The notes beneath the pieces were generated by a model that had not been told where the DNA came from, did not search any database, and saw nothing but the letters and a program-made list of their open reading frames with translations. A DNA stretch of 63,988 nt, the filler included, from Octopus bimaculoides (lineage: Eukaryota), in the NCBI RefSeq assembly GCF_001194135.2. It is 4 parts of 4 records of this genome, joined end to end, with 100 filler letters (N's around TTAATTAATTAA, not from the genome) between each part and the next. Parts side by side here need not be neighbours in the genome. Positions count along the whole stretch, not along the records: positions 1 to 24,332 come from NC_069006.1; 3 more parts are not named here. One strand, given 5' to 3'. Position 1 is the first letter of the stretch. The number at the start of each line of letters is the position of its first letter. A program made the position numbers and the translations under genes. This document shows, piece by piece, positions 653 through 22,099 of this stretch.

Positions 653-1105
653 TGGCACTGCGCCAGTGGAGCACTAACAGCACTGTCCGAGCGTGTTCAT
701 TGCCAGAGCAGCTGTCTGGCTTCTGTGCTAGGGGCCCGCAAATAGCACCATTTGAGCATAATCGTTACCAGTGTTGCCTTCTAGCACATGTGCTGGTGGC
801 ACGTTAGAAAATCATTCGAGCGAGGTCGTTGCCAGTGCCGCTGGACTGGCTCCTGTGCAGGTGGCATGTAAAAAACATCTTTTTGAGCGTGGCCGTTGTC
901 AATACCGTGTGACTGGCCCTTGTGCCGGTGGCACATAAAAACACTCACTACACTCTCTCGGAGTGGTTGGTGTTAGGAAGGGCATCCAGCTGTAGAAACT
1001 CTGCCAGATCAGATTGGAGCCTGGTGCAGCCATCTGGCTTGCCAGTCCTCAGTCAAATCGTCCAACCCATGCTAGTATGGAAAGTGGACATTAAATGATG
1101 ATGAA
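653..1105 (+). mobile_element. 5'-truncated 3' end of an RTE-type LINE (high-copy repeat)
   Basis: Shares the gaaactctgccagatcagattggagcctggtgcagcc...(gat)n tail with 18100-18465, 21541-21950, 29905-30122, 52436-52920 and 61765-61906. Confidence 0.75.
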
Positions 1106-1914: not shown

Positions 1915-2130
1915 ATTCTTTATTGCTCACAGGGGGCTAAACATAGAGGGGACAAACAAAGGGATTAAGTCGATTACATCGACCCCAGTGTGTAACTGGT
2001 ACTTATTTAATCAACCCTAAAAGGATGAAAGGCAAAGTTGACCTCGGCAGAATTTGAACTCAGAACGTAATGGCAGACGAAATACCGCTAAGCATTTCGC
2101 CCAGCGTGCTAACATTTCTGCCAGCTCACT
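1915..2130 (-). mobile_element. tRNA-derived SINE (family C)
   Basis: ctggcagaaatgttagcacg...ttctgagttcaaattctgccgaggtcaactttgcctttcatcc. Other copies at about 3045-3218, 23985-24190, 35432-35635, plus many older ones. Confidence 0.75.
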
Positions 2131-2229
2131 ACCTTATATATATATATGCACACAGACACACACATATATATATCTATGAATGTGTACATGCCTTTCTTTT
2201 TCTGGGCTCAAATCTCATTTGTGAACCCA

Positions 2230-2468
2230 TGGAAAAGCTCCACCAACTATTCTGCCTATATGTCTGTGCACACCTTTCAATGCAGTGTATGCCAGAAGGT
2301 TTGCAAATCCAACAGAGGCTCAAAAGACATTTTAAGATCCACAAAGATCAGAACTTATATGCAACTCTTGGTGGTCCAAATTGGATATGCAATCTATGTG
2401 AGTGTCTTTTCAGAACATTGTCTGGTTTAAAAAGCCACATCAGATGCCATGATGGTTTTAAGGTGTAG
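2230..2468 (+). mobile_element. Frameshifted pair of C2H2 zinc fingers, probably the C-terminus of an RTE LINE ORF
   Basis: QCSVCQKVCKSNRG/(frameshift)LKRHFKIH and WICNLCECLFRTLSGLKSHIRCH*. Isolated, no TGEKP linkers. Confidence 0.5.
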
Positions 2469-8024: not shown

Positions 8025-8844
8025 TGTAATCAACCTGTTACTCTAGTTAATACACATATACCAAATCTACAACACTATTGAATCCTCTTTTTTTTTTTTT
8101 TTTTTTTNNNNNNNNNNTTTTTTTTTTTTTTGTTTTTAGCATTTCAGTATATGTATGCATGTATATAAACATAATATGTGTATGTATTCTTTTTGTTTAA
8201 CACCATTCTCTACAGGTTACCACTAACATTCACTCATGCCTCCATCCCATCATGAAATGATCCAACTATTGATACAAAGTGATCCAGACAACCAAATTTT
8301 ATGAGTGTTCTCCAAAGGGAGGCCCTATTCACAGTATTTTGTGTGCATGCACTGCTTGTTTGTCTGGGACTTGTCAAATGATGAAGACACCTCTGAAGAG
8401 ATTGCAAAAAGGGTCAGAAATGGATTTAGGTTATTCCTCATTATTTTTCATTCTATAGAGAAACAGGAGTACAGGACATGTTTGTATGTTTACACATAGG
8501 TTTATTTATATACATATATATGTATGTGTGTGTGTGTGTGTGTNNNNNNNNNNNNNNNNNNNNNNNNNNNNNNNNNNNNNNNNNNNNNNNNNNNNNNNNN
8601 NNNNNNNNNNNNNNNNNNNNNNNNNNNNNNNNNNNNNNNNNNNNNNNNNNNNNNNNNNNNNNNNNNNNNNNNNNNNNNNNNNNNNNNNNNNNNNNNNNNN
8701 NNNNNNNNNNNNNNNNNNNNNNNNNNNNNNNNNNNNNNNNNNNNNNNNNCACAGAAGTTTGGTGCAGGTTCAGTTTGACTGGCTCTTGTGATACCGTCCT
8801 GCCCATGCTAGCATGGAAAATAGATGTTAAATGATGATGATGAA

Positions 8845-13845: not shown

Positions 13846-13903
<58 letters not shown>

Positions 13904-13905
13904 TT

Positions 13906-14119
13906 TAAAGGACACAATACATGTTTTTAAGTGCGACTAATAGTGTCATATGTTGAGAAATATTTCAAACATATTCATCAGACACAAACCACATATTATA
14001 ACGAACTAAATTTTCTTAGTTCGTTATGATATGTGGTCTGTGCCTGAAGAATATGTTACAGATATTTCTCAATATATAACACTATTAGTAGCACTTAAAA
14101 ACATGTATTGTGTCCTTTA
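13906..14119. repeat. 214-bp foldback palindrome
   Basis: Arms of about 104 bp pair nearly throughout (taaaggacacaatacatg... / ...catgtattgtgtccttta) around a 6-nt spacer. Confidence 0.85.
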
Positions 14120-14726
14120 GATAAATAATGGAGTACTTTTTGGGGAGGATTTTCTATCATGGAACAGTACATTATATATATATATATATATATCTCAGTG
14201 ATTAAAGCAACTTATCTACATAAGGAAACAAACTGTTTTTTGCTATCCACTCATAATGAAATTTCTGATAGCAAAGTCACAAAAAAGTGGAACATTAACT
14301 TTTAGCACACTGCCCTGTTATTACAGGAGAGAAAACTCATACGGTAACACGATGCACCTACAGAGTGCTAAAGGTTAGCTTTATTTATTGAGGTATTGGC
14401 ATGTGTGTATATCGCTATGAATGAGTGTGTGTGTGTATAAAAAATAAAGTAAAGTAAACCCTATGGACATTACTGTCTCAAGTCCAAGGAGGGTTCATAG
14501 GGCCAGTTACCCAGTTTCTGTGGCGTACAAGTGGCTGAGACCACAACATCCACCCTGAATGTGACACCAGTGTTTTTGCTCAAGAATACACTGCACTCCC
14601 TGGTCCAGGAACTGAGGCCATGGTTTTATTTTATGAGTGCAACCATCTTAACCACTAGGCTATGCATCTCCATGTGTGTGAAGTGTATGTATGTATACAT
14701 AAATGTGTGTGTGTGTGTCTATATAT

Positions 14727-15124: not shown

Positions 15125-16101
15125 GTGTGTATGTATGTCTAGATACAAGTGTGCTGATGGACGGGACAGGTGGGGTATAAAAATTCATTTAAAAACATCA
15201 AGGAGCTGACCAAGTGGAGGTGGGACGTGTGTTTTGTTTTGTCTTTAAAGGGCCATCCCCAAGCCCACCCCCTTGTGGGCTGCACAGGAGGTGGGTGGGT
15301 GGGGGAGCAAGGGGAAACAAAAACAATCAAAAACAAACAAAAAAATTGGGTAAGTGATGGGGGTGTGAGAAAGAAAGAACAAAAGAAATGCCAGCACCAT
15401 CCAACCTAATTGTCAGGTCTTCGTTAACTTTCAGCCAAATTATGAGATCAACCACCAGCATGGTATCAGATCAGTAATAACACAGACAAGGTGTAGTAGT
15501 AGTGGTGGTGGTGGTGGTGGTTTGGTCTACAGTGATTGCAGACTGAGAAAGAGCAGGAGTGGGGTATGGGTCTAATTTGGAAAAGGACCACAGTAAAAAC
15601 AAAACATGAAAAATGGGTCCTTCAAACATTGTATGCATCACCATCATCGTCAATACCACCACCACCACCACCACCAACCATCATGATCATCAATACCATC
15701 GCCATCATCACCACCACCATCATCATCATCATCGTCATCATCAACTAACACCATTACCAATTATCATCATCATTTCACACATGACCAGAACCTTTCCATA
15801 CAACCTTACAGATTAATTAATGTCATATTTTCTATTCTTCAATACACACACACACTTATATATACATATATATATAGAGAGAGAGGTTATGAGCGGTAAT
15901 GGTGTCAATAAGACCCAAAGGTGTCAGGTAATGCTGAGTAAGTGCTATGGACAGACCAGAGTTAAGCTCCAGGTTCGGTGATTATGCGAATGAGAAGTTC
16001 AACGTAGGTCATATATCAGCGTGTGTATATATAAAATTTTTTTTTTTCAGAATGAGATAAAAAAACCAAGGCTATGAAGATTTTAGAACATTTATAAATA
16101 G

Positions 16102-16149
16102 GTCTTACAGCTGTTTCCAGGATATTTATTATATCCCTTCATCAGAGAC
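16102..16149 (-). ncRNA. Minimal type I hammerhead ribozyme motif (inverted copy)
   Basis: Reverse complement of 16522-16569. Confidence 0.75.
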
Positions 16150-16521
16150 GGTGTGAGAAAATGGTTAAGCAATAGTTATTCTAGATAAGATATGAAATAC
16201 AGAGTGAAGTGGAGGAATGAAAATAGATGTGAGATATGCACGGATATTGNNNNNNNNNNNNNNNNNNNNNNNNNNNNNNNNNNNNNNNNNNNNNNNNNNN
16301 NNNNNNNNNNNNNNNNNNNNNNNNNNNNNNNNNNNNNNNNNNNNNNNNNNNNNNNNNNNNNNNNNNNNNNNNNNNNNNNNNNNNNNNNNNNNNNNNNNNN
16401 NNNNNNNNNNNNNNNNNNNNNNNNNNNNNNNNNNNNNNNNNNNNNNNNNNNNNNNNNNNNNNNNNNNTCTGTATTTCATATCTTATCTAGAATAACTATT
16501 GCTTAACCATTTTCTCACACC

Positions 16522-16569
16522 GTCTCTGATGAAGGGATATAATAAATATCCTGGAAACAGCTGTAAGAC
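16522..16569 (+). ncRNA. Minimal type I hammerhead ribozyme motif
   Basis: GTCT-CTGATGA-AGGGATAT..ATATCCTG-GAAA-CAGCTG-TA-AGAC. Stem I GTCT/AGAC, palindromic stem III, GUA cleavage triplet. Confidence 0.75.
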
Positions 16570-17208
16570 CTATTTATAAATGTTCTAAAATCTTCACAGC
16601 CTTGGTTTTTTATCTCATTCTGAAAAAAAATTTTTTTATATATACACACATAATATATATATATATATATATACATACACATTTATATATACACATATAT
16701 ATACACACACATATATATACATATACACATATATACACACATATATATATATATACATATACACATATATACACACATATATATATATATACATATACAC
16801 ATGTATATATACATACACACATATATATACATACATATGTATATACATATATTCATACATATATATATACACACATACACACACACATATATATCAAATA
16901 CATATTTTGGGGGGTGGGCAGGGAAGGAGAGAATTAATTTTCTTGAAAAAGAAAAAAAATTCCAAAACTTAAATTCTTAAACCTTTTCTACTTTCATTTT
17001 TCCTTCTTTTCCAGAAAAAAAAAAAATTCTTAAATTTTATTTTTAAAAAAACTCAATACTTTTCCTCTTTAAAAAGTTTTGCAATTTTGCGTTCTTTCAT
17101 TGTTTCTTTTCTTTCGTTTTTCATTTCAAGAACATTTTTTTTTATTTTAAAGTTTTGTTTTTTCAATATTTATTTTGATAAATGAATAATTACAAGGGTT
17201 AACTAACA

Positions 17209-17269
17209 TCATCGTTTCATGGGTGAAACATTGACATTTTGGTAAATTTGACGAGAATCATCAGGTTCA
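17209..17269 (-). CDS. PTPN11: PTPN11-like last coding exon with stop
   Basis: Polypyrimidine tract plus ttgcag acceptor; phase 2 matches the previous exon. (H)EPDDSRQIYQNVNVSPMKR* parallels SHP2 EDSARVYENV. Confidence 0.85.
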
Positions 17270-18734
17270 CTGCAAGGTAAAAAAAAACAAACTTTTAATA
17301 ACATCATCATCATTTAACATCTGTTTTCTATGCTGGTTTGTATTTCACAGTTTGGCAGGACCCAGCAAGCCACAAGATGGTGCTGGTCACCATTGTCAGC
17401 TTTGGCATGGTTCCTATAGCTGGATGCCCTTCCTAACACCAGCCTCTTCACATAATGTACTGGGTGCATTATTTTTCATGGCACCAGCATCATAGAAGTT
17501 ACCTTGCCATCAGCTACACTAAACAGTTTTACAAAGCACTGCATTGTTATGAATCAATTTATCATCATCATCATCATCATCATTTAAAGTCTGTTTTCTA
17601 TGCTGGTGTGGATTTCACAATCTGACAGGATTCAGTAAGCCATGGGGCTATGCTGAGCACCAATGTCGGTTTTGACATGGTCCCTGTAGCTGAATGCTCT
17701 TCCTAACACCAGCCTTTTCACATGGTGTACTGAGTGTTTTTTACATGGCACCAGCATCAAAGAAGTTACCTTGCCATCAGCTACACTAAAGAGTCTTCTA
17801 AAGCGCAGCATTGTTACAACTCAATTTGATTTATTCCTCACAAACTGTACAGGATGCTTTTTTTTGTGACACTAGTATGGGTAGGGTTGCCTTTTAGCAT
17901 GCAAAACAAAAGAAAGCTAATATAATTATCATTGTTCTTTAATGTCCATGCCCCTTGCTGACATAGGTTGTGTAGTTTGATGGGCCCAAGAACTGTATTA
18001 TACTCCAGCGTCTGCTTTGGCATGGCTTCTATGGCTTGATACCATTCCTATTTGTATATGTGTGTATATAATTGTAATTAAGGGCATCCAGAAATTTTCT
18101 CACATATATAAAGCGAAATCGTGATGGCACCTGTGCCCAGCGTCGCTTTCCTGACACTTGTGCCGGGGACACGTATAAAGACATTCGAGCGAGATCGTTG
18201 CTAGTGCCGCTAGACTGGCTCCTGTGCAGGTGGCACGTAAAATACACCATTTTGAGCGTGGCCGTTGCCAGTACCGCCTGACTGGTCTTCATGCCGGTGG
18301 CACATAAAAGCACCCACTACACTGTCAGAGTGGTTGGCGTTAGGAAGGGCATCCAGCTGCAGAAACCCTGCCAAATTAGATTGGAGGTTGGTGTAGCCAT
18401 CTGGTTCACCAGTCCTCCGTCAAATCATCCAACCCATGCTAGCATGGAATGATGATGATGATATGATGCTAAATCATCCTGCTGGTGAAGGAAAAGCCAT
18501 TGGGCAAACCCTGGGCATGTCTATATCATTATTAATTTCTGTTATCTTACTGCTTCGATTTCAACACGCGTATTACTTTGTGCTGAGATGATTTAGAATC
18601 TACTTTCAGCATAGAGGCTAGAAAATTCTTTCTATGCCCTTAATTATAATTAGAAATATAATTTCACCTTAATTGGTCTTTTTTTATATGCTGGCCACTG
18701 ATGAAATTTAAAAAAAAAAATTAATCTTTTGTTA

Positions 18735-20778: not shown

Positions 20779-22099
20779 CTTTAAATAAATTAGACGAATA
20801 TTATACATTAACCCATTACCTCCCATAATTCTATTAACTGGAATTTTTTTTTATGAAACTTTGATTTCTAGCATAAAACAGCCTTAGAAACATACTGGAA
20901 TGATCAAAATAACATTTGAAAATAACATTTTAAATAGAAATAAGCGAGATATTGGGTGAAAAGTTAGCAAACCTCATTTGAATATCAGAGAAATATACCT
21001 AGCAGATATAGCAAAAAGGTTAGATATGTATAAATATTGACAGATAATTATGAAATTTGCAATTTTTAAGTGATCTCATTTGAGATCACTGGTAGGTAAT
21101 GGGTTAATGATTAATGAATCCAATGATGAGGTGTGTATACACACACACATGTATATATCTAACCATTTAATGTTCGTTTTCTATGTTGTCATGGGTTGGA
21201 CAGTCTGACAGGAACTGAGCAACCAGAGGATTGCATCCAGCTCCAGTATCTGTTTTGGCGTGGTTTCCACAGCTGGATGCCCTTCCTAATGCCAACCACT
21301 TTACAGAGTGTATTGGGTGCTTTTTTTTTATGTGGCACCAGCACTAGTGAGGCCACCAAGTAACTTGTAAGAGAAGACCCCGAGGGAGATGGCCATGTAT
21401 CAGGTGGTGACCTATTAGAGTAAGATAAAGGGATGGAAATATGTATCTGACAGTAAAGGAGATACGTGGCTCCCCCTGTTGGAAAAGGAAAGAGAAATTG
21501 AAGGAGATATGTTGGGTTATATCCTCATGTTACAGGGAGACACATCATCATCATCATCGTCGTCGTTTAACGTCCGCTTTCCATACTGGCATGGGTTGGA
21601 CGGTTTGACTGAGGACTGGCGATCCAGATGGCTGCACCAGGCTCCAATCTGATCTGGCAAAGTTTCTACAGCTGGATGCCCTTCCTAACGCTAACCACTC
21701 CAAGAGTGTAGTGGGTGCTTTTATGTGCCATCAGCACGAGGGCCAGACAGGCGGTTCTGGCAACGACCACGCTCAAAAGGTGTGTTTTAGGTGCTACCTG
21801 CACGGGAGCCAGTCCGGTAGCACTGGCAAAGACCACACTCGAATGTTGTTTTTCACGTGCCACTGGCACGTGTGCCAGTAAGGCGACGCTGGCAATGATC
21901 ATGCTCGAATGGTGCTTTTTATGTGCCACTGGCATGGGAGCCAATCCATGGTCCTCATAGAAGCCGGAAGACCAGCCCCAAGAAGGAAAACTTTACTTGT
22001 TCTTACTTTTTACCTATCCTCACTTGGTCATGATCAGTAGAATATGATTGTTTATACAAATGACCAAAATACGATTCCTCTGAAATATCTCTGGAGTAA

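What the first reader, a model, noticed from the sequence alone, without database searches (positions are those of the whole stretch)
16021..16648. Inverted hammerhead pair about 1 kb downstream of the PTPN11 stop codon
Two 180-bp inverted arms flank a gap, each with a core-intact minimal HHR. The minus copy (16149->16102) is in the PTPN11 sense orientation. If the 3' UTR reaches it, the mRNA would contain a long dsRNA hairpin and a self-cleavage motif. Cephalopods have abundant A-to-I editing, and a 3'-UTR hammerhead is established in rodent Clec2 genes. Caveats: AATAAA hexamers at about 17169 and 17140 could end the mRNA earlier, and inverted copies across a gap can be assembly artefacts. 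One substitution between the arms mildly favours a real duplication.
Basis: partly seen in the sequence, partly recalled or inferred. Interest (0 to 1): 0.7.

Follow-up and report, generated by a model that had tools for sequence, protein, structure and literature searches.

The report
Inverted retrotransposon ends carrying minimal hammerheads
The two inverted arms and their hammerhead motifs are real in the sequence, but they look like the head-to-head ends of a Penelope-like retrotransposon insertion, a known source of minimal hammerheads, not a ribozyme switch serving the PTPN11 gene.

Summary
Arms 16011-16203 and 16468-16658 are inverted copies across the gap: 99% identical over 144 nt and about 96% over 193 nt. 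The left arm runs 46 nt further, to the gap edge. Each arm carries an identical 48-nt type I hammerhead motif with every core nucleotide present (+ 16522-16569, - 16149-16102).

A motif this good is expected fewer than about 1e-4 times per window by chance. No Rfam hammerhead model detects it, and its 10.1-11.1 pair is non-canonical.

The anatomy matches the minimal hammerheads published for Penelope-like elements (PLEs):
- helix II of 7 bp and helix I of 4 bp;
- an extra nucleotide after A9;
- a 2-bp helix III inside the 8-nt palindrome ACAGCUGU, which predicts activity only as a dimer;
- two copies 373 nt apart on opposite strands, both pointing outward;
- A/T-rich ends abutting a (TA/CA)n microsatellite, and a short-read assembly break.

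I read it as a head-to-head pair of 5'-truncated PLE or PLE-derived copies (confidence 0.6). An RT-endonuclease ORF and other family copies could not be checked.

A read-through PTPN11 transcript would fold the arms into a roughly 190-bp duplex that buries the single sense hammerhead. Three AATAAA hexamers lie 35-168 nt after the stop codon. A role in PTPN11 regulation is therefore unsupported. This is a known kind of feature, of low interest.

The parts
16011..16249 (-). Left arm. The element reads on the minus strand, with its 3' end pointing left. The inner 46 nt (16204-16249) have no visible counterpart because the right copy is cut by the gap.
16102..16149 (-). Minimal type I hammerhead motif in the PTPN11 sense. 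Predicted cleavage after A17, between 16106 and 16105.
   Evidence: fold
16250..16467 (.). Assembly gap of 218 N (estimated length). It should hold at least the 46-nt counterpart of 16204-16249 and the junction of the two copies. Its content and true length are unknown.
16468..16658 (+). Right arm. The element reads on the plus strand, with its 3' end pointing right into the microsatellite.
16522..16569 (+). Minimal type I hammerhead motif, antisense to PTPN11. Predicted cleavage between 16565 and 16566.
16021..16065 (-). Outer (3') terminus of the left copy: ...CUCAUUCUG A(11) U(4) AUAUAUACACAC.
16604..16649 (+). Outer (3') terminus of the right copy: ...CUCAUUCUG A(8) U(7) AUAUAUACACAC, merging into the microsatellite.
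16637..16905 (.). (TA/CA)n compound microsatellite abutting the right arm. Likely the insertion target.
17209..17269 (-). Inferred last coding exon of the SHP-family phosphatase (PTPN11-like), ..EPDDSRQIYQNVNVSPMKR*, with stop TGA at 17211-17209. The exon is inferred from an AG acceptor at 17271-17270 and a pYxN-type tail motif, not from transcripts.
   Evidence: family identity
17036..17174 (-). Three AATAAA hexamers starting at 17174, 17146 and 17041, which is 35, 63 and 168 nt after the stop. They are candidate poly(A) signals that would end the mRNA before the repeat.

Best explanation
The locus is one insertion of a hammerhead-bearing retroelement of the Penelope-like (PLE) kind. It is either two 5'-truncated PLE copies or a non-autonomous derivative of the PLE terminal repeat (pLTR). 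It sits in or beside a (TA/CA)n microsatellite about 0.55 kb downstream of the PTPN11-like stop codon.

The two copies lie head to head with their 3' ends outward, which makes the inverted repeat. Each copy carries the element's minimal type I hammerhead about 70 nt from its 3' end.

Inferred origin: the PLE endonuclease/reverse transcriptase nicks both target strands and primes cDNA synthesis from each, leaving two oppositely oriented copies truncated at their 5' ends.

Inferred function: within the element's own life cycle the hammerhead acts only when two sense copies pair through the palindrome ACAGCUGU to build a long helix III, as in tandem transcripts. At this locus each strand holds one sense copy, so the motif is most likely a passenger. 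Any read-through RNA would form a long duplex instead of a ribozyme.

The palindromic structure next to a microsatellite is also the likely reason the short-read assembly broke here.

Shown: the repeat, the motif, its non-random quality, the predicted dimer fold and the predicted duplex. Inferred: PLE identity, the twin-priming origin and the lack of activity.
For: Architecture:
- The arms are 99% identical over 144 nt and 96% over 193 nt, and both point outward.
- The outer ends are A/T-rich and share the same ...CTCATTCTG-A(n)T(n)-ATATATACACAC terminus.
- A 269-nt (TA/CA)n array abuts the right arm.

Motif:
- All core nucleotides are present, with helix I 4 bp, helix II 7 bp, an extra A after A9, and helix III 2 bp inside the 8-nt palindrome ACAGCUGU.
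- A motif this good was never produced in 2,000 shuffles or 400,000 Markov trials.
- The predicted monomer MFE (-10.3 kcal/mol) is not the hammerhead fold (-5.0). The predicted MFE of two 48-mers (-25.9) is exactly the double hammerhead with an 8-bp intermolecular helix III.

Literature match:
[quoted passage not shown] They work as dimers.
- In Schistosoma mansoni, pairs occur 100-700 bp apart on opposite strands (PMC4209133). Here the spacing is 373 nt.
- PLE insertions often carry an inverted 5'-truncated copy, prefer microsatellites such as (TA)n, have the HHR near the 3' end, and cause problems for short-read assemblies (PMC8557442).
- A purified PLE protein cleaves and extends both target strands (PMC11167929).
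- Penelope elements are abundant, and recently active, in octopus genomes (PMC13282606 and PMC8967140).

A second, gap-free palindrome beside a microsatellite at 13903-14122 shows that such structures exist as assembled sequence in this region.
Against: - No RT or GIY-YIG coding sequence is visible. Only about 230 nt of each copy are readable and the centre is in the gap.
- No other copy of the arm exists in the 24-kb window, and no relative could be fetched. Family membership, copy number and covariation are therefore untested.
- The G10.1-C11.1 pair, described as highly conserved in PLE min-HHRs, is replaced here by A.G, or by G.U plus an extra G.
- No Rfam hammerhead model matches, even when only 71 nt are searched at E<=10.
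- About 0.5% divergence between the arms needs a very recent insertion, gene conversion or an artefact.
- The shared outer ATATATACACAC could be duplicated flank and not the element's terminus.
Confidence: 0.6

Rival explanations
1. Assembly artefact. Only one copy of the element exists at this locus. The second arm is the other haplotype's copy, or a collapsed repeat contig, placed in reverse next to a scaffolding gap. The hammerhead motif would still be real, but there would be no inverted pair and no hairpin.
For: The arms flank an N-gap of estimated length, and the right contig starts inside the repeat. The arms are nearly identical, and the few differences are of the size expected between alleles or from homopolymer errors. 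Low-complexity TA/CA sequence at the outer ends could seed a chimeric join.
Against: The two arms were assembled with different outer flanks: unique sequence on the left and a 269-nt microsatellite plus the PTPN11 3' region on the right. They differ at 5 positions. None of the other four gaps in the window has duplicated flanks. Inverted twin copies are the published norm for this element class.
Confidence: 0.15
2. A non-PLE repeat: a foldback or MITE-type DNA element with long terminal inverted repeats, or a local inverted duplication. The hammerhead-like motif would then be fortuitous or unrelated to retrotransposition.
For: Only an inverted repeat is visible, with no coding sequence. A palindromic element without a hammerhead core lies 2 kb away at 13903-14122. 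The 10.1-11.1 pair is non-canonical and Rfam models are silent. Genome-wide, a relaxed descriptor is expected to hit about 200 times by chance.
Against: A motif of the observed quality is expected fewer than about 15 times per 2.7 Gb by chance. It also carries features that my descriptor did not require, all of them PLE min-HHR hallmarks: the 8-nt palindrome, the 7-bp helix II and the A after A9. Its sense points outward toward A/T-rich termini, like a retroelement 3' end. No clear target-site duplication is visible. No tRNA-like head or B box is present in the arms.
Confidence: 0.15
3. The pair lies in an extended PTPN11 3' UTR and acts on the mRNA through self-cleavage as in Clec2, or as an ADAR-editing or dsRNA signal.
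For: The minus copy is in the gene's sense, 1,060 nt after the stop. No other gene was recognised between the stop and the repeat. The predicted duplex is long and nearly perfect.
Against: Three AATAAA hexamers lie within 168 nt of the stop. A single sense copy of a dimer-dependent motif does not reach the hammerhead fold as a monomer. Even consensus PLE min-HHRs cleave poorly in vitro. The duplex would bury the ribozyme. The arms are too similar to be an old conserved feature. No transcript or orthologue evidence was available.
Confidence: 0.05

Closest known systems
Minimal hammerhead ribozymes (min-HHR) in the pseudo-LTRs of Penelope-like retroelements (Cervera & de la Pena 2014, PMC4209133)
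   Same: Type I topology and an intact CUGAUGA/GAAA/UH core. Helix II of 7 bp and helix I of 4 bp without a defined loop 1. An extra nucleotide after A9. A tiny helix III embedded in a palindrome, so that only a dimer forms a stable ribozyme. Two motifs a few hundred bp apart on opposite strands.
   Different: The G10.1-C11.1 pair is not canonical here. No RT-endonuclease ORF or direct pLTR is visible. Family copies and covariation were not seen.
PLE insertion architecture (Craig et al. 2021, PMC8557442; Arkhipova-lab biochemistry, PMC11167929)
   Same: An inverted 5'-truncated copy abutting another copy head to head, a microsatellite target, the HHR near the 3' end, and a short-read assembly break.
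   Different: Both visible copies are short fragments. The 30-40-bp 'tail' and the partial tandem cannot be identified.
Animal non-LTR retrozymes and Schistosoma SINE-like hammerhead repeats (PMC7229834; bioRxiv 10.64898/2026.07.22.740005)
   Same: Small, AT-rich, non-coding repeats with a type I hammerhead and a weak palindromic helix III. They are proposed to be pLTR-derived.
   Different: Those are direct tandem arrays with a canonical 6-bp helix I, a 4-bp helix II and loop-loop contacts. This is an inverted pair with min-HHR proportions.
Discontinuous 3'-UTR hammerhead of rodent Clec2 genes (reviewed in PMC6765202)
   Same: A hammerhead core downstream of a stop codon, in the sense of the gene.
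   Different: The Clec2 ribozyme is split by several hundred nucleotides, lies between the stop and the poly(A) signal, and cleaves in vitro in that bipartite form. Here the motif is contiguous, dimer-dependent, repeat-borne, and lies beyond three AATAAA hexamers.

Membership tests
Hammerhead ribozyme (general definition) | Conserved core: C3 U4 G5 A6 N7 G8 A9, G12 A13 A14, A15.1-U16.1, H17 | tested here: met
   CUGAUGA ... GAAA ... U-A in both copies.
Hammerhead ribozyme (general definition) | Three helices around the core | tested here: met
   Helix I is 4 bp (GUCU/AGAC), helix II is 7 bp (GGGAUAU/AUAUCCU) and helix III is 2 bp (AC/GU). As a monomer the hammerhead fold (-5.0 kcal/mol) loses to another fold (-10.3).
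Hammerhead ribozyme (general definition) | G10.1-C11.1 pair closing helix II | tested here: not met
   The sequence reads CUGAUGA-A-GGG...CCU-G-GAAA. This gives A.G opposite each other, or G.U plus an extra G.
Hammerhead ribozyme (general definition) | Match to curated covariance models (Rfam Hammerhead_1, Hammerhead_3, Hammerhead_II, HH9, HH10) | tested here: not met
   No hit at gathering score, none at E<=10 on 851 nt, and none on 71 nt. The literature says min-HHRs needed a relaxed descriptor of their own.
Hammerhead ribozyme (general definition) | Self-cleavage | not testable with these tools
   Needs in vitro transcription of monomer and dimer constructs.
Hammerhead ribozyme (general definition) | Compensatory changes in helices among relatives | tested here: inconclusive
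   The two copies are identical across the motif. No other relative could be obtained.
PLE min-HHR | [quoted passage not shown] | tested here: met
   7 bp and 4 bp, and no extension of helix I is possible. Criteria from PMC4209133.
PLE min-HHR | [quoted passage not shown] | tested here: met
   An A follows CUGAUGA. It faces an unpaired G on the other strand, which is not part of the published consensus.
PLE min-HHR | Palindromic 15.2-16.2/loop 3 allowing a dimeric ribozyme | tested here: met
   ACAGCUGU is an 8-nt palindrome. The cofold MFE of two 48-mers is the double hammerhead with an 8-bp helix III.
PLE min-HHR | Located in the terminal repeat of an element encoding RT plus GIY-YIG endonuclease | not testable with these tools
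   The interior lies in the gap. No cephalopod sequence was reachable in the collections.
PLE min-HHR | Belongs to a multi-copy consensus family in the genome | not testable with these tools
   There is no further copy in the 24-kb window, and the source genome is not available here.
PLE insertion architecture | Inverted 5'-truncated copy head to head with another copy, 3' ends outward | tested here: met
   Motif sense and A/T-rich termini point outward in both arms. The inner junction is hidden by the gap.
PLE insertion architecture | Insertion into a microsatellite | tested here: met
   A (TA/CA)n array at 16637-16905 abuts the right arm, and ATATAT/GTGTGTATATATA lies at the left boundary.
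PLE insertion architecture | 30-40-bp 'tail' at one end | tested here: inconclusive
   The boundaries fall in low-complexity sequence and cannot be set from one locus.
Clec2-type 3'-UTR hammerhead | Split ribozyme lying between the stop codon and the poly(A) signal of the host mRNA | tested here: not met
   The motif is contiguous and type I, and three AATAAA hexamers precede it.
Non-LTR retrozyme | Direct tandem repeats of 170-400 nt, each with a hammerhead | tested here: not met
   The copies are inverted, and no direct copy is visible.

The most novel reading that the evidence does not exclude
The retroelement twin has been captured by a long 3'-UTR isoform of the PTPN11-like gene, for example in neural tissue. 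Its arms of at least 190 bp would then form a near-perfect dsRNA that is hyper-edited by ADAR or processed into small RNAs. That would tie the stability or localisation of a signalling phosphatase mRNA to a very recent transposon insertion. Hammerhead cleavage would play at most a minor part.
Probability: 0.07. Interest if true: 0.45.

Novelty: new member of a known kind. Interest (0 to 1): 0.2.

Why it matters
It matters mainly for annotation.
- Hammerhead cores near genes in cephalopod and other invertebrate genomes should first be tested for the Penelope-type min-HHR anatomy before a gene-regulatory role is proposed.
- Inverted twins beside microsatellites explain some assembly gaps.

If the arms really are transcribed with PTPN11, the locus would be a clean natural example of a young transposon-made dsRNA in a cephalopod 3' UTR. 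Nothing here shows that.

Tried and rejected
- **Rfam scans.** Three scans found no hammerhead family: the whole piece at gathering score, 851 nt at E<=10, and 71 nt at E<=10. The only sub-threshold hits were miRNA-like matches to the TA/CA microsatellite, which I treat as low-complexity noise.
- **Other copies in the window.** blastn with word size 7 found only low-complexity matches.
- **Orthologous locus or transcripts.** A protein search with the C-terminal exons returned SHP-family fragments from other animals. None carried this tail, so no cephalopod locus or mRNA could be fetched.
- **Metagenome pattern scans.** Two scans, one for the helix II variant and one for the helix III/helix I segment, found nothing.
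- **tRNA-derived SINE reading.** There are no ARAGORN hits in the window and no B box in the arms.
- **Relation to the palindrome at 13903-14122.** The alignment shows only scattered identity, and that element has GACA/AACA where GAAA is needed. I rejected it as a relative.
- **Pfam scan of six-frame translations.** The tool refuses sequences with stop codons. I prepared stop-free segments but did not submit them, so transposon-encoded domains in the window remain unscreened.
- **Lunse et al. 2017.** This paper on PLE hammerhead dimers is not held in the library.

Full report
**What is in the sequence**

Region 16011-16658 is an inverted repeat interrupted by the assembly gap at 16250-16467.
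- The ungapped core, 16060-16203 against 16468-16611, is 144 nt long and 99% complementary.
- With two one-base indels the match extends to 16011-16203 against 16658-16468, 193 nt at 95.9%.
- The arms differ by one substitution (16074 against 16597), by one A in an A-run, and by three positions at an A-run/T-run boundary.

**The gap**

The left contig continues 46 nt further inward (16204-16249) than the point at which the right contig resumes. Those 46 nt are not self-complementary. The two sides are therefore not contiguous, and if the repeat is symmetric at least 46 nt plus a centre are missing. Continuity cannot be settled with these tools.

The other four gaps of the piece have no duplicated flanks apart from one microsatellite match. 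An inverted duplicate at a gap is therefore not a habit of this assembly, at least locally.

**The motif**

Both arms contain the same 48-mer, at + 16522-16569 and - 16149-16102:

GUCU / CUGAUGA / A GGGAUAU aauaa AUAUCCU G / GAAA / C agcu G / U A^ / AGAC

- All invariant hammerhead nucleotides are present.
- Helix I is 4 bp, helix II is 7 bp and helix III is 2 bp.
- The topology is type I.
- Predicted cleavage falls after 16565 on the plus strand and after 16106 on the minus strand.
- One deviation: the position normally held by the G10.1-C11.1 pair is A opposite G, or G.U with an extra G.

**Chance**

| Descriptor | Expected hits per window |
|---|---|
| Relaxed, modelled on the published min-HHR descriptor, 2,000 dinucleotide shuffles | 0.0015 |
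| Relaxed, first-order Markov model | 0.0018 |
| Helix II >=6 bp and helix III >=1 bp | 1.7e-4 |
| Helix II >=7 bp and helix III >=2 bp, as observed | 0 hits in 400,000 trials |

In the real window the relaxed descriptor hit only the two arm copies and one weak site at 8393. Scaled to a genome of a few Gb, the last row means at most about a dozen chance matches. Meeting one in a random 24-kb window argues that the motif belongs to a multi-copy family.

No Rfam hammerhead model reports it, even when only 71 nt are searched at E<=10. It is not a canonical hammerhead by those models.

**What it resembles**

Cervera and de la Pena described the minimal hammerheads of metazoan Penelope-like elements (PMC4209133). 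Their features are:
- helix II of 7-8 bp;
- helix I of 4-5 bp with no defined loop 1;
- an unpaired nucleotide between A9 and 10.1;
- a palindromic 15.2-16.2/loop 3 region that lets two copies build one long helix III;
- very low in vitro activity even as dimers;
- frequent single motifs from truncated elements;
- in Schistosoma mansoni, pairs 100-700 bp apart on opposite strands.

The present motif meets each structural point except the G10.1-C11.1 pair. The two copies are 373 nt apart on opposite strands.

ViennaRNA agrees with dimer dependence:
- The monomer's minimum-energy fold (-10.3 kcal/mol) is not the hammerhead (-5.0).
- The minimum-energy fold of two 48-mers (-25.9) is precisely the double hammerhead, with an 8-bp intermolecular helix III formed by ACAGCUGU.

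**Architecture**

In both arms the hammerhead sense points outward. It is followed about 40 nt later by ...CUCAUUCUG, an A-run, a T-run and AUAUAUACACAC. The right arm runs into a 269-nt (TA/CA)n array.

Craig et al. describe these traits of PLE insertions (PMC8557442):
- high 5' truncation;
- partial tandems;
- an inverted 5'-truncated copy placed head to head, which creates inverted repeats;
- hammerheads near the 3' end;
- a bias for microsatellite targets such as (TA)n;
- resulting problems for short-read assemblies.

A purified PLE protein cleaves and extends both strands of its target (PMC11167929). That offers a direct route to two oppositely oriented cDNA copies. Penelope elements are abundant and include young copies in octopus genomes.

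A second, gap-free palindrome lies at 13903-14122, with arms of about 110 nt at 87% identity and TG/TA microsatellite on its flank. It shows that such structures occur as contiguous sequence here. It lacks GAAA, though, and is not demonstrably related.

**Best explanation (confidence 0.6)**

The locus is a head-to-head pair of 5'-truncated copies of a PLE, or of a pLTR-derived non-autonomous relative. It was inserted recently beside a microsatellite, and each copy carries the element's own dimer-dependent minimal hammerhead.

PLE identity is inferred from anatomy and context. The following could not be examined:
- an RT/GIY-YIG ORF;
- a direct pLTR;
- other family copies;
- covariation.

The reasons are that the interior lies in the gap, the window holds no other copy, and no cephalopod DNA or transcript was reachable.

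**Relation to the gene**

The neighbouring gene is an SHP-family phosphatase on the minus strand. Its exons match PTPN11/PTPN6 structures and corkscrew-like proteins.

I infer the last exon at 17269-17209, encoding ..EPDDSRQIYQNVNVSPMKR*, with the stop at 17211-17209.
- The right arm begins 551 nt downstream of the stop.
- The sense hammerhead begins 1,060 nt downstream.
- AATAAA hexamers lie 35, 63 and 168 nt after the stop.
- The next AATAAA in that sense is inside the hammerhead's helix II loop.

If a transcript did read through, the arms would form a near-perfect duplex of about 190 bp. This gave -297 kcal/mol with the gap replaced by a 4-nt linker, so the number is illustrative. The duplex would sequester the only sense hammerhead, which in any case lacks a partner for dimerisation.

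A dsRNA or editing role remains possible but is unsupported.

**Rivals**

| Rival | Confidence | For | Against |
|---|---|---|---|
| Assembly artefact with one real copy | 0.15 | Near-identity of the arms and the position of the gap | Distinct flanks, five differences between the arms, and the known biology of the element class |
| Non-PLE foldback element or local duplication with a fortuitous motif | 0.15 | No coding sequence is visible | Would have to explain by chance several PLE-specific features that my descriptor did not require |
| A regulatory 3'-UTR element for PTPN11 | 0.05 | Sense orientation and position downstream of the stop | See "Relation to the gene" above |

The tRNA-SINE reading has no support.

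**Verdict**

The feature is a new member of a known kind and of low interest, unless transcripts show that the arms are part of the mRNA.

Noticed in passing
window 13903-14122: A contiguous 220-nt palindrome with arms of about 110 nt at 87% identity, meeting at about 14012. (TA)n/(TG)n lies on its left at 13846-13902, and another (TA)n run lies at 14173-14193. Each arm has CUGAUGA or CUGAAGA followed by a 7-bp hairpin, but GACA/AACA where a hammerhead needs GAAA. It is possibly a foldback/MITE-type element or a decayed relative.
   Followed up: partly
window 8389-8431 (+): A weak hit to the relaxed hammerhead descriptor: ACCU CUGAAGA ... GAAA ... UU AGGU. Helix II is only 4 bp with two G.U pairs, and there is no helix III. 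Such a hit is expected 0.002 times per window. It is not part of any repeat I could see and is probably chance.
   Followed up: partly
window 16125-16130 (-) and 16541-16546 (+): The helix II loop of the hammerhead spells AAUAAA. In the PTPN11 sense this is the first poly(A)-type hexamer after the three that lie close to the stop codon.
   Followed up: no
window 17302-17827: Two tandem copies of a 270-nt unit (82% matches) lie in the last intron of the phosphatase gene, directly upstream of the last exon. The same SINE-like sequence recurs elsewhere, for example around 970-1095 (minus) and 21520-21700 (plus).
   Followed up: partly
window 2058-2465 (+): An open frame with C2H2 zinc-finger-like spacing (C..C...H...H motifs such as CNLCECLFRTLSGLKSHIRCH). 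It may be an exon or a relic of a zinc-finger gene.
   Followed up: no
window 16635-16750: Sub-threshold Rfam matches to miRNA families (mir-297 at 39 bits against a gathering score of 90, and others) fall entirely in the TA/CA microsatellite. They look like low-complexity artefacts.
   Followed up: yes
window 15636-15754: An imperfect (CAT/CAC)n trinucleotide array lies about 270 nt beyond the left arm. It is open in several frames but has no protein match that I tested.
   Followed up: no
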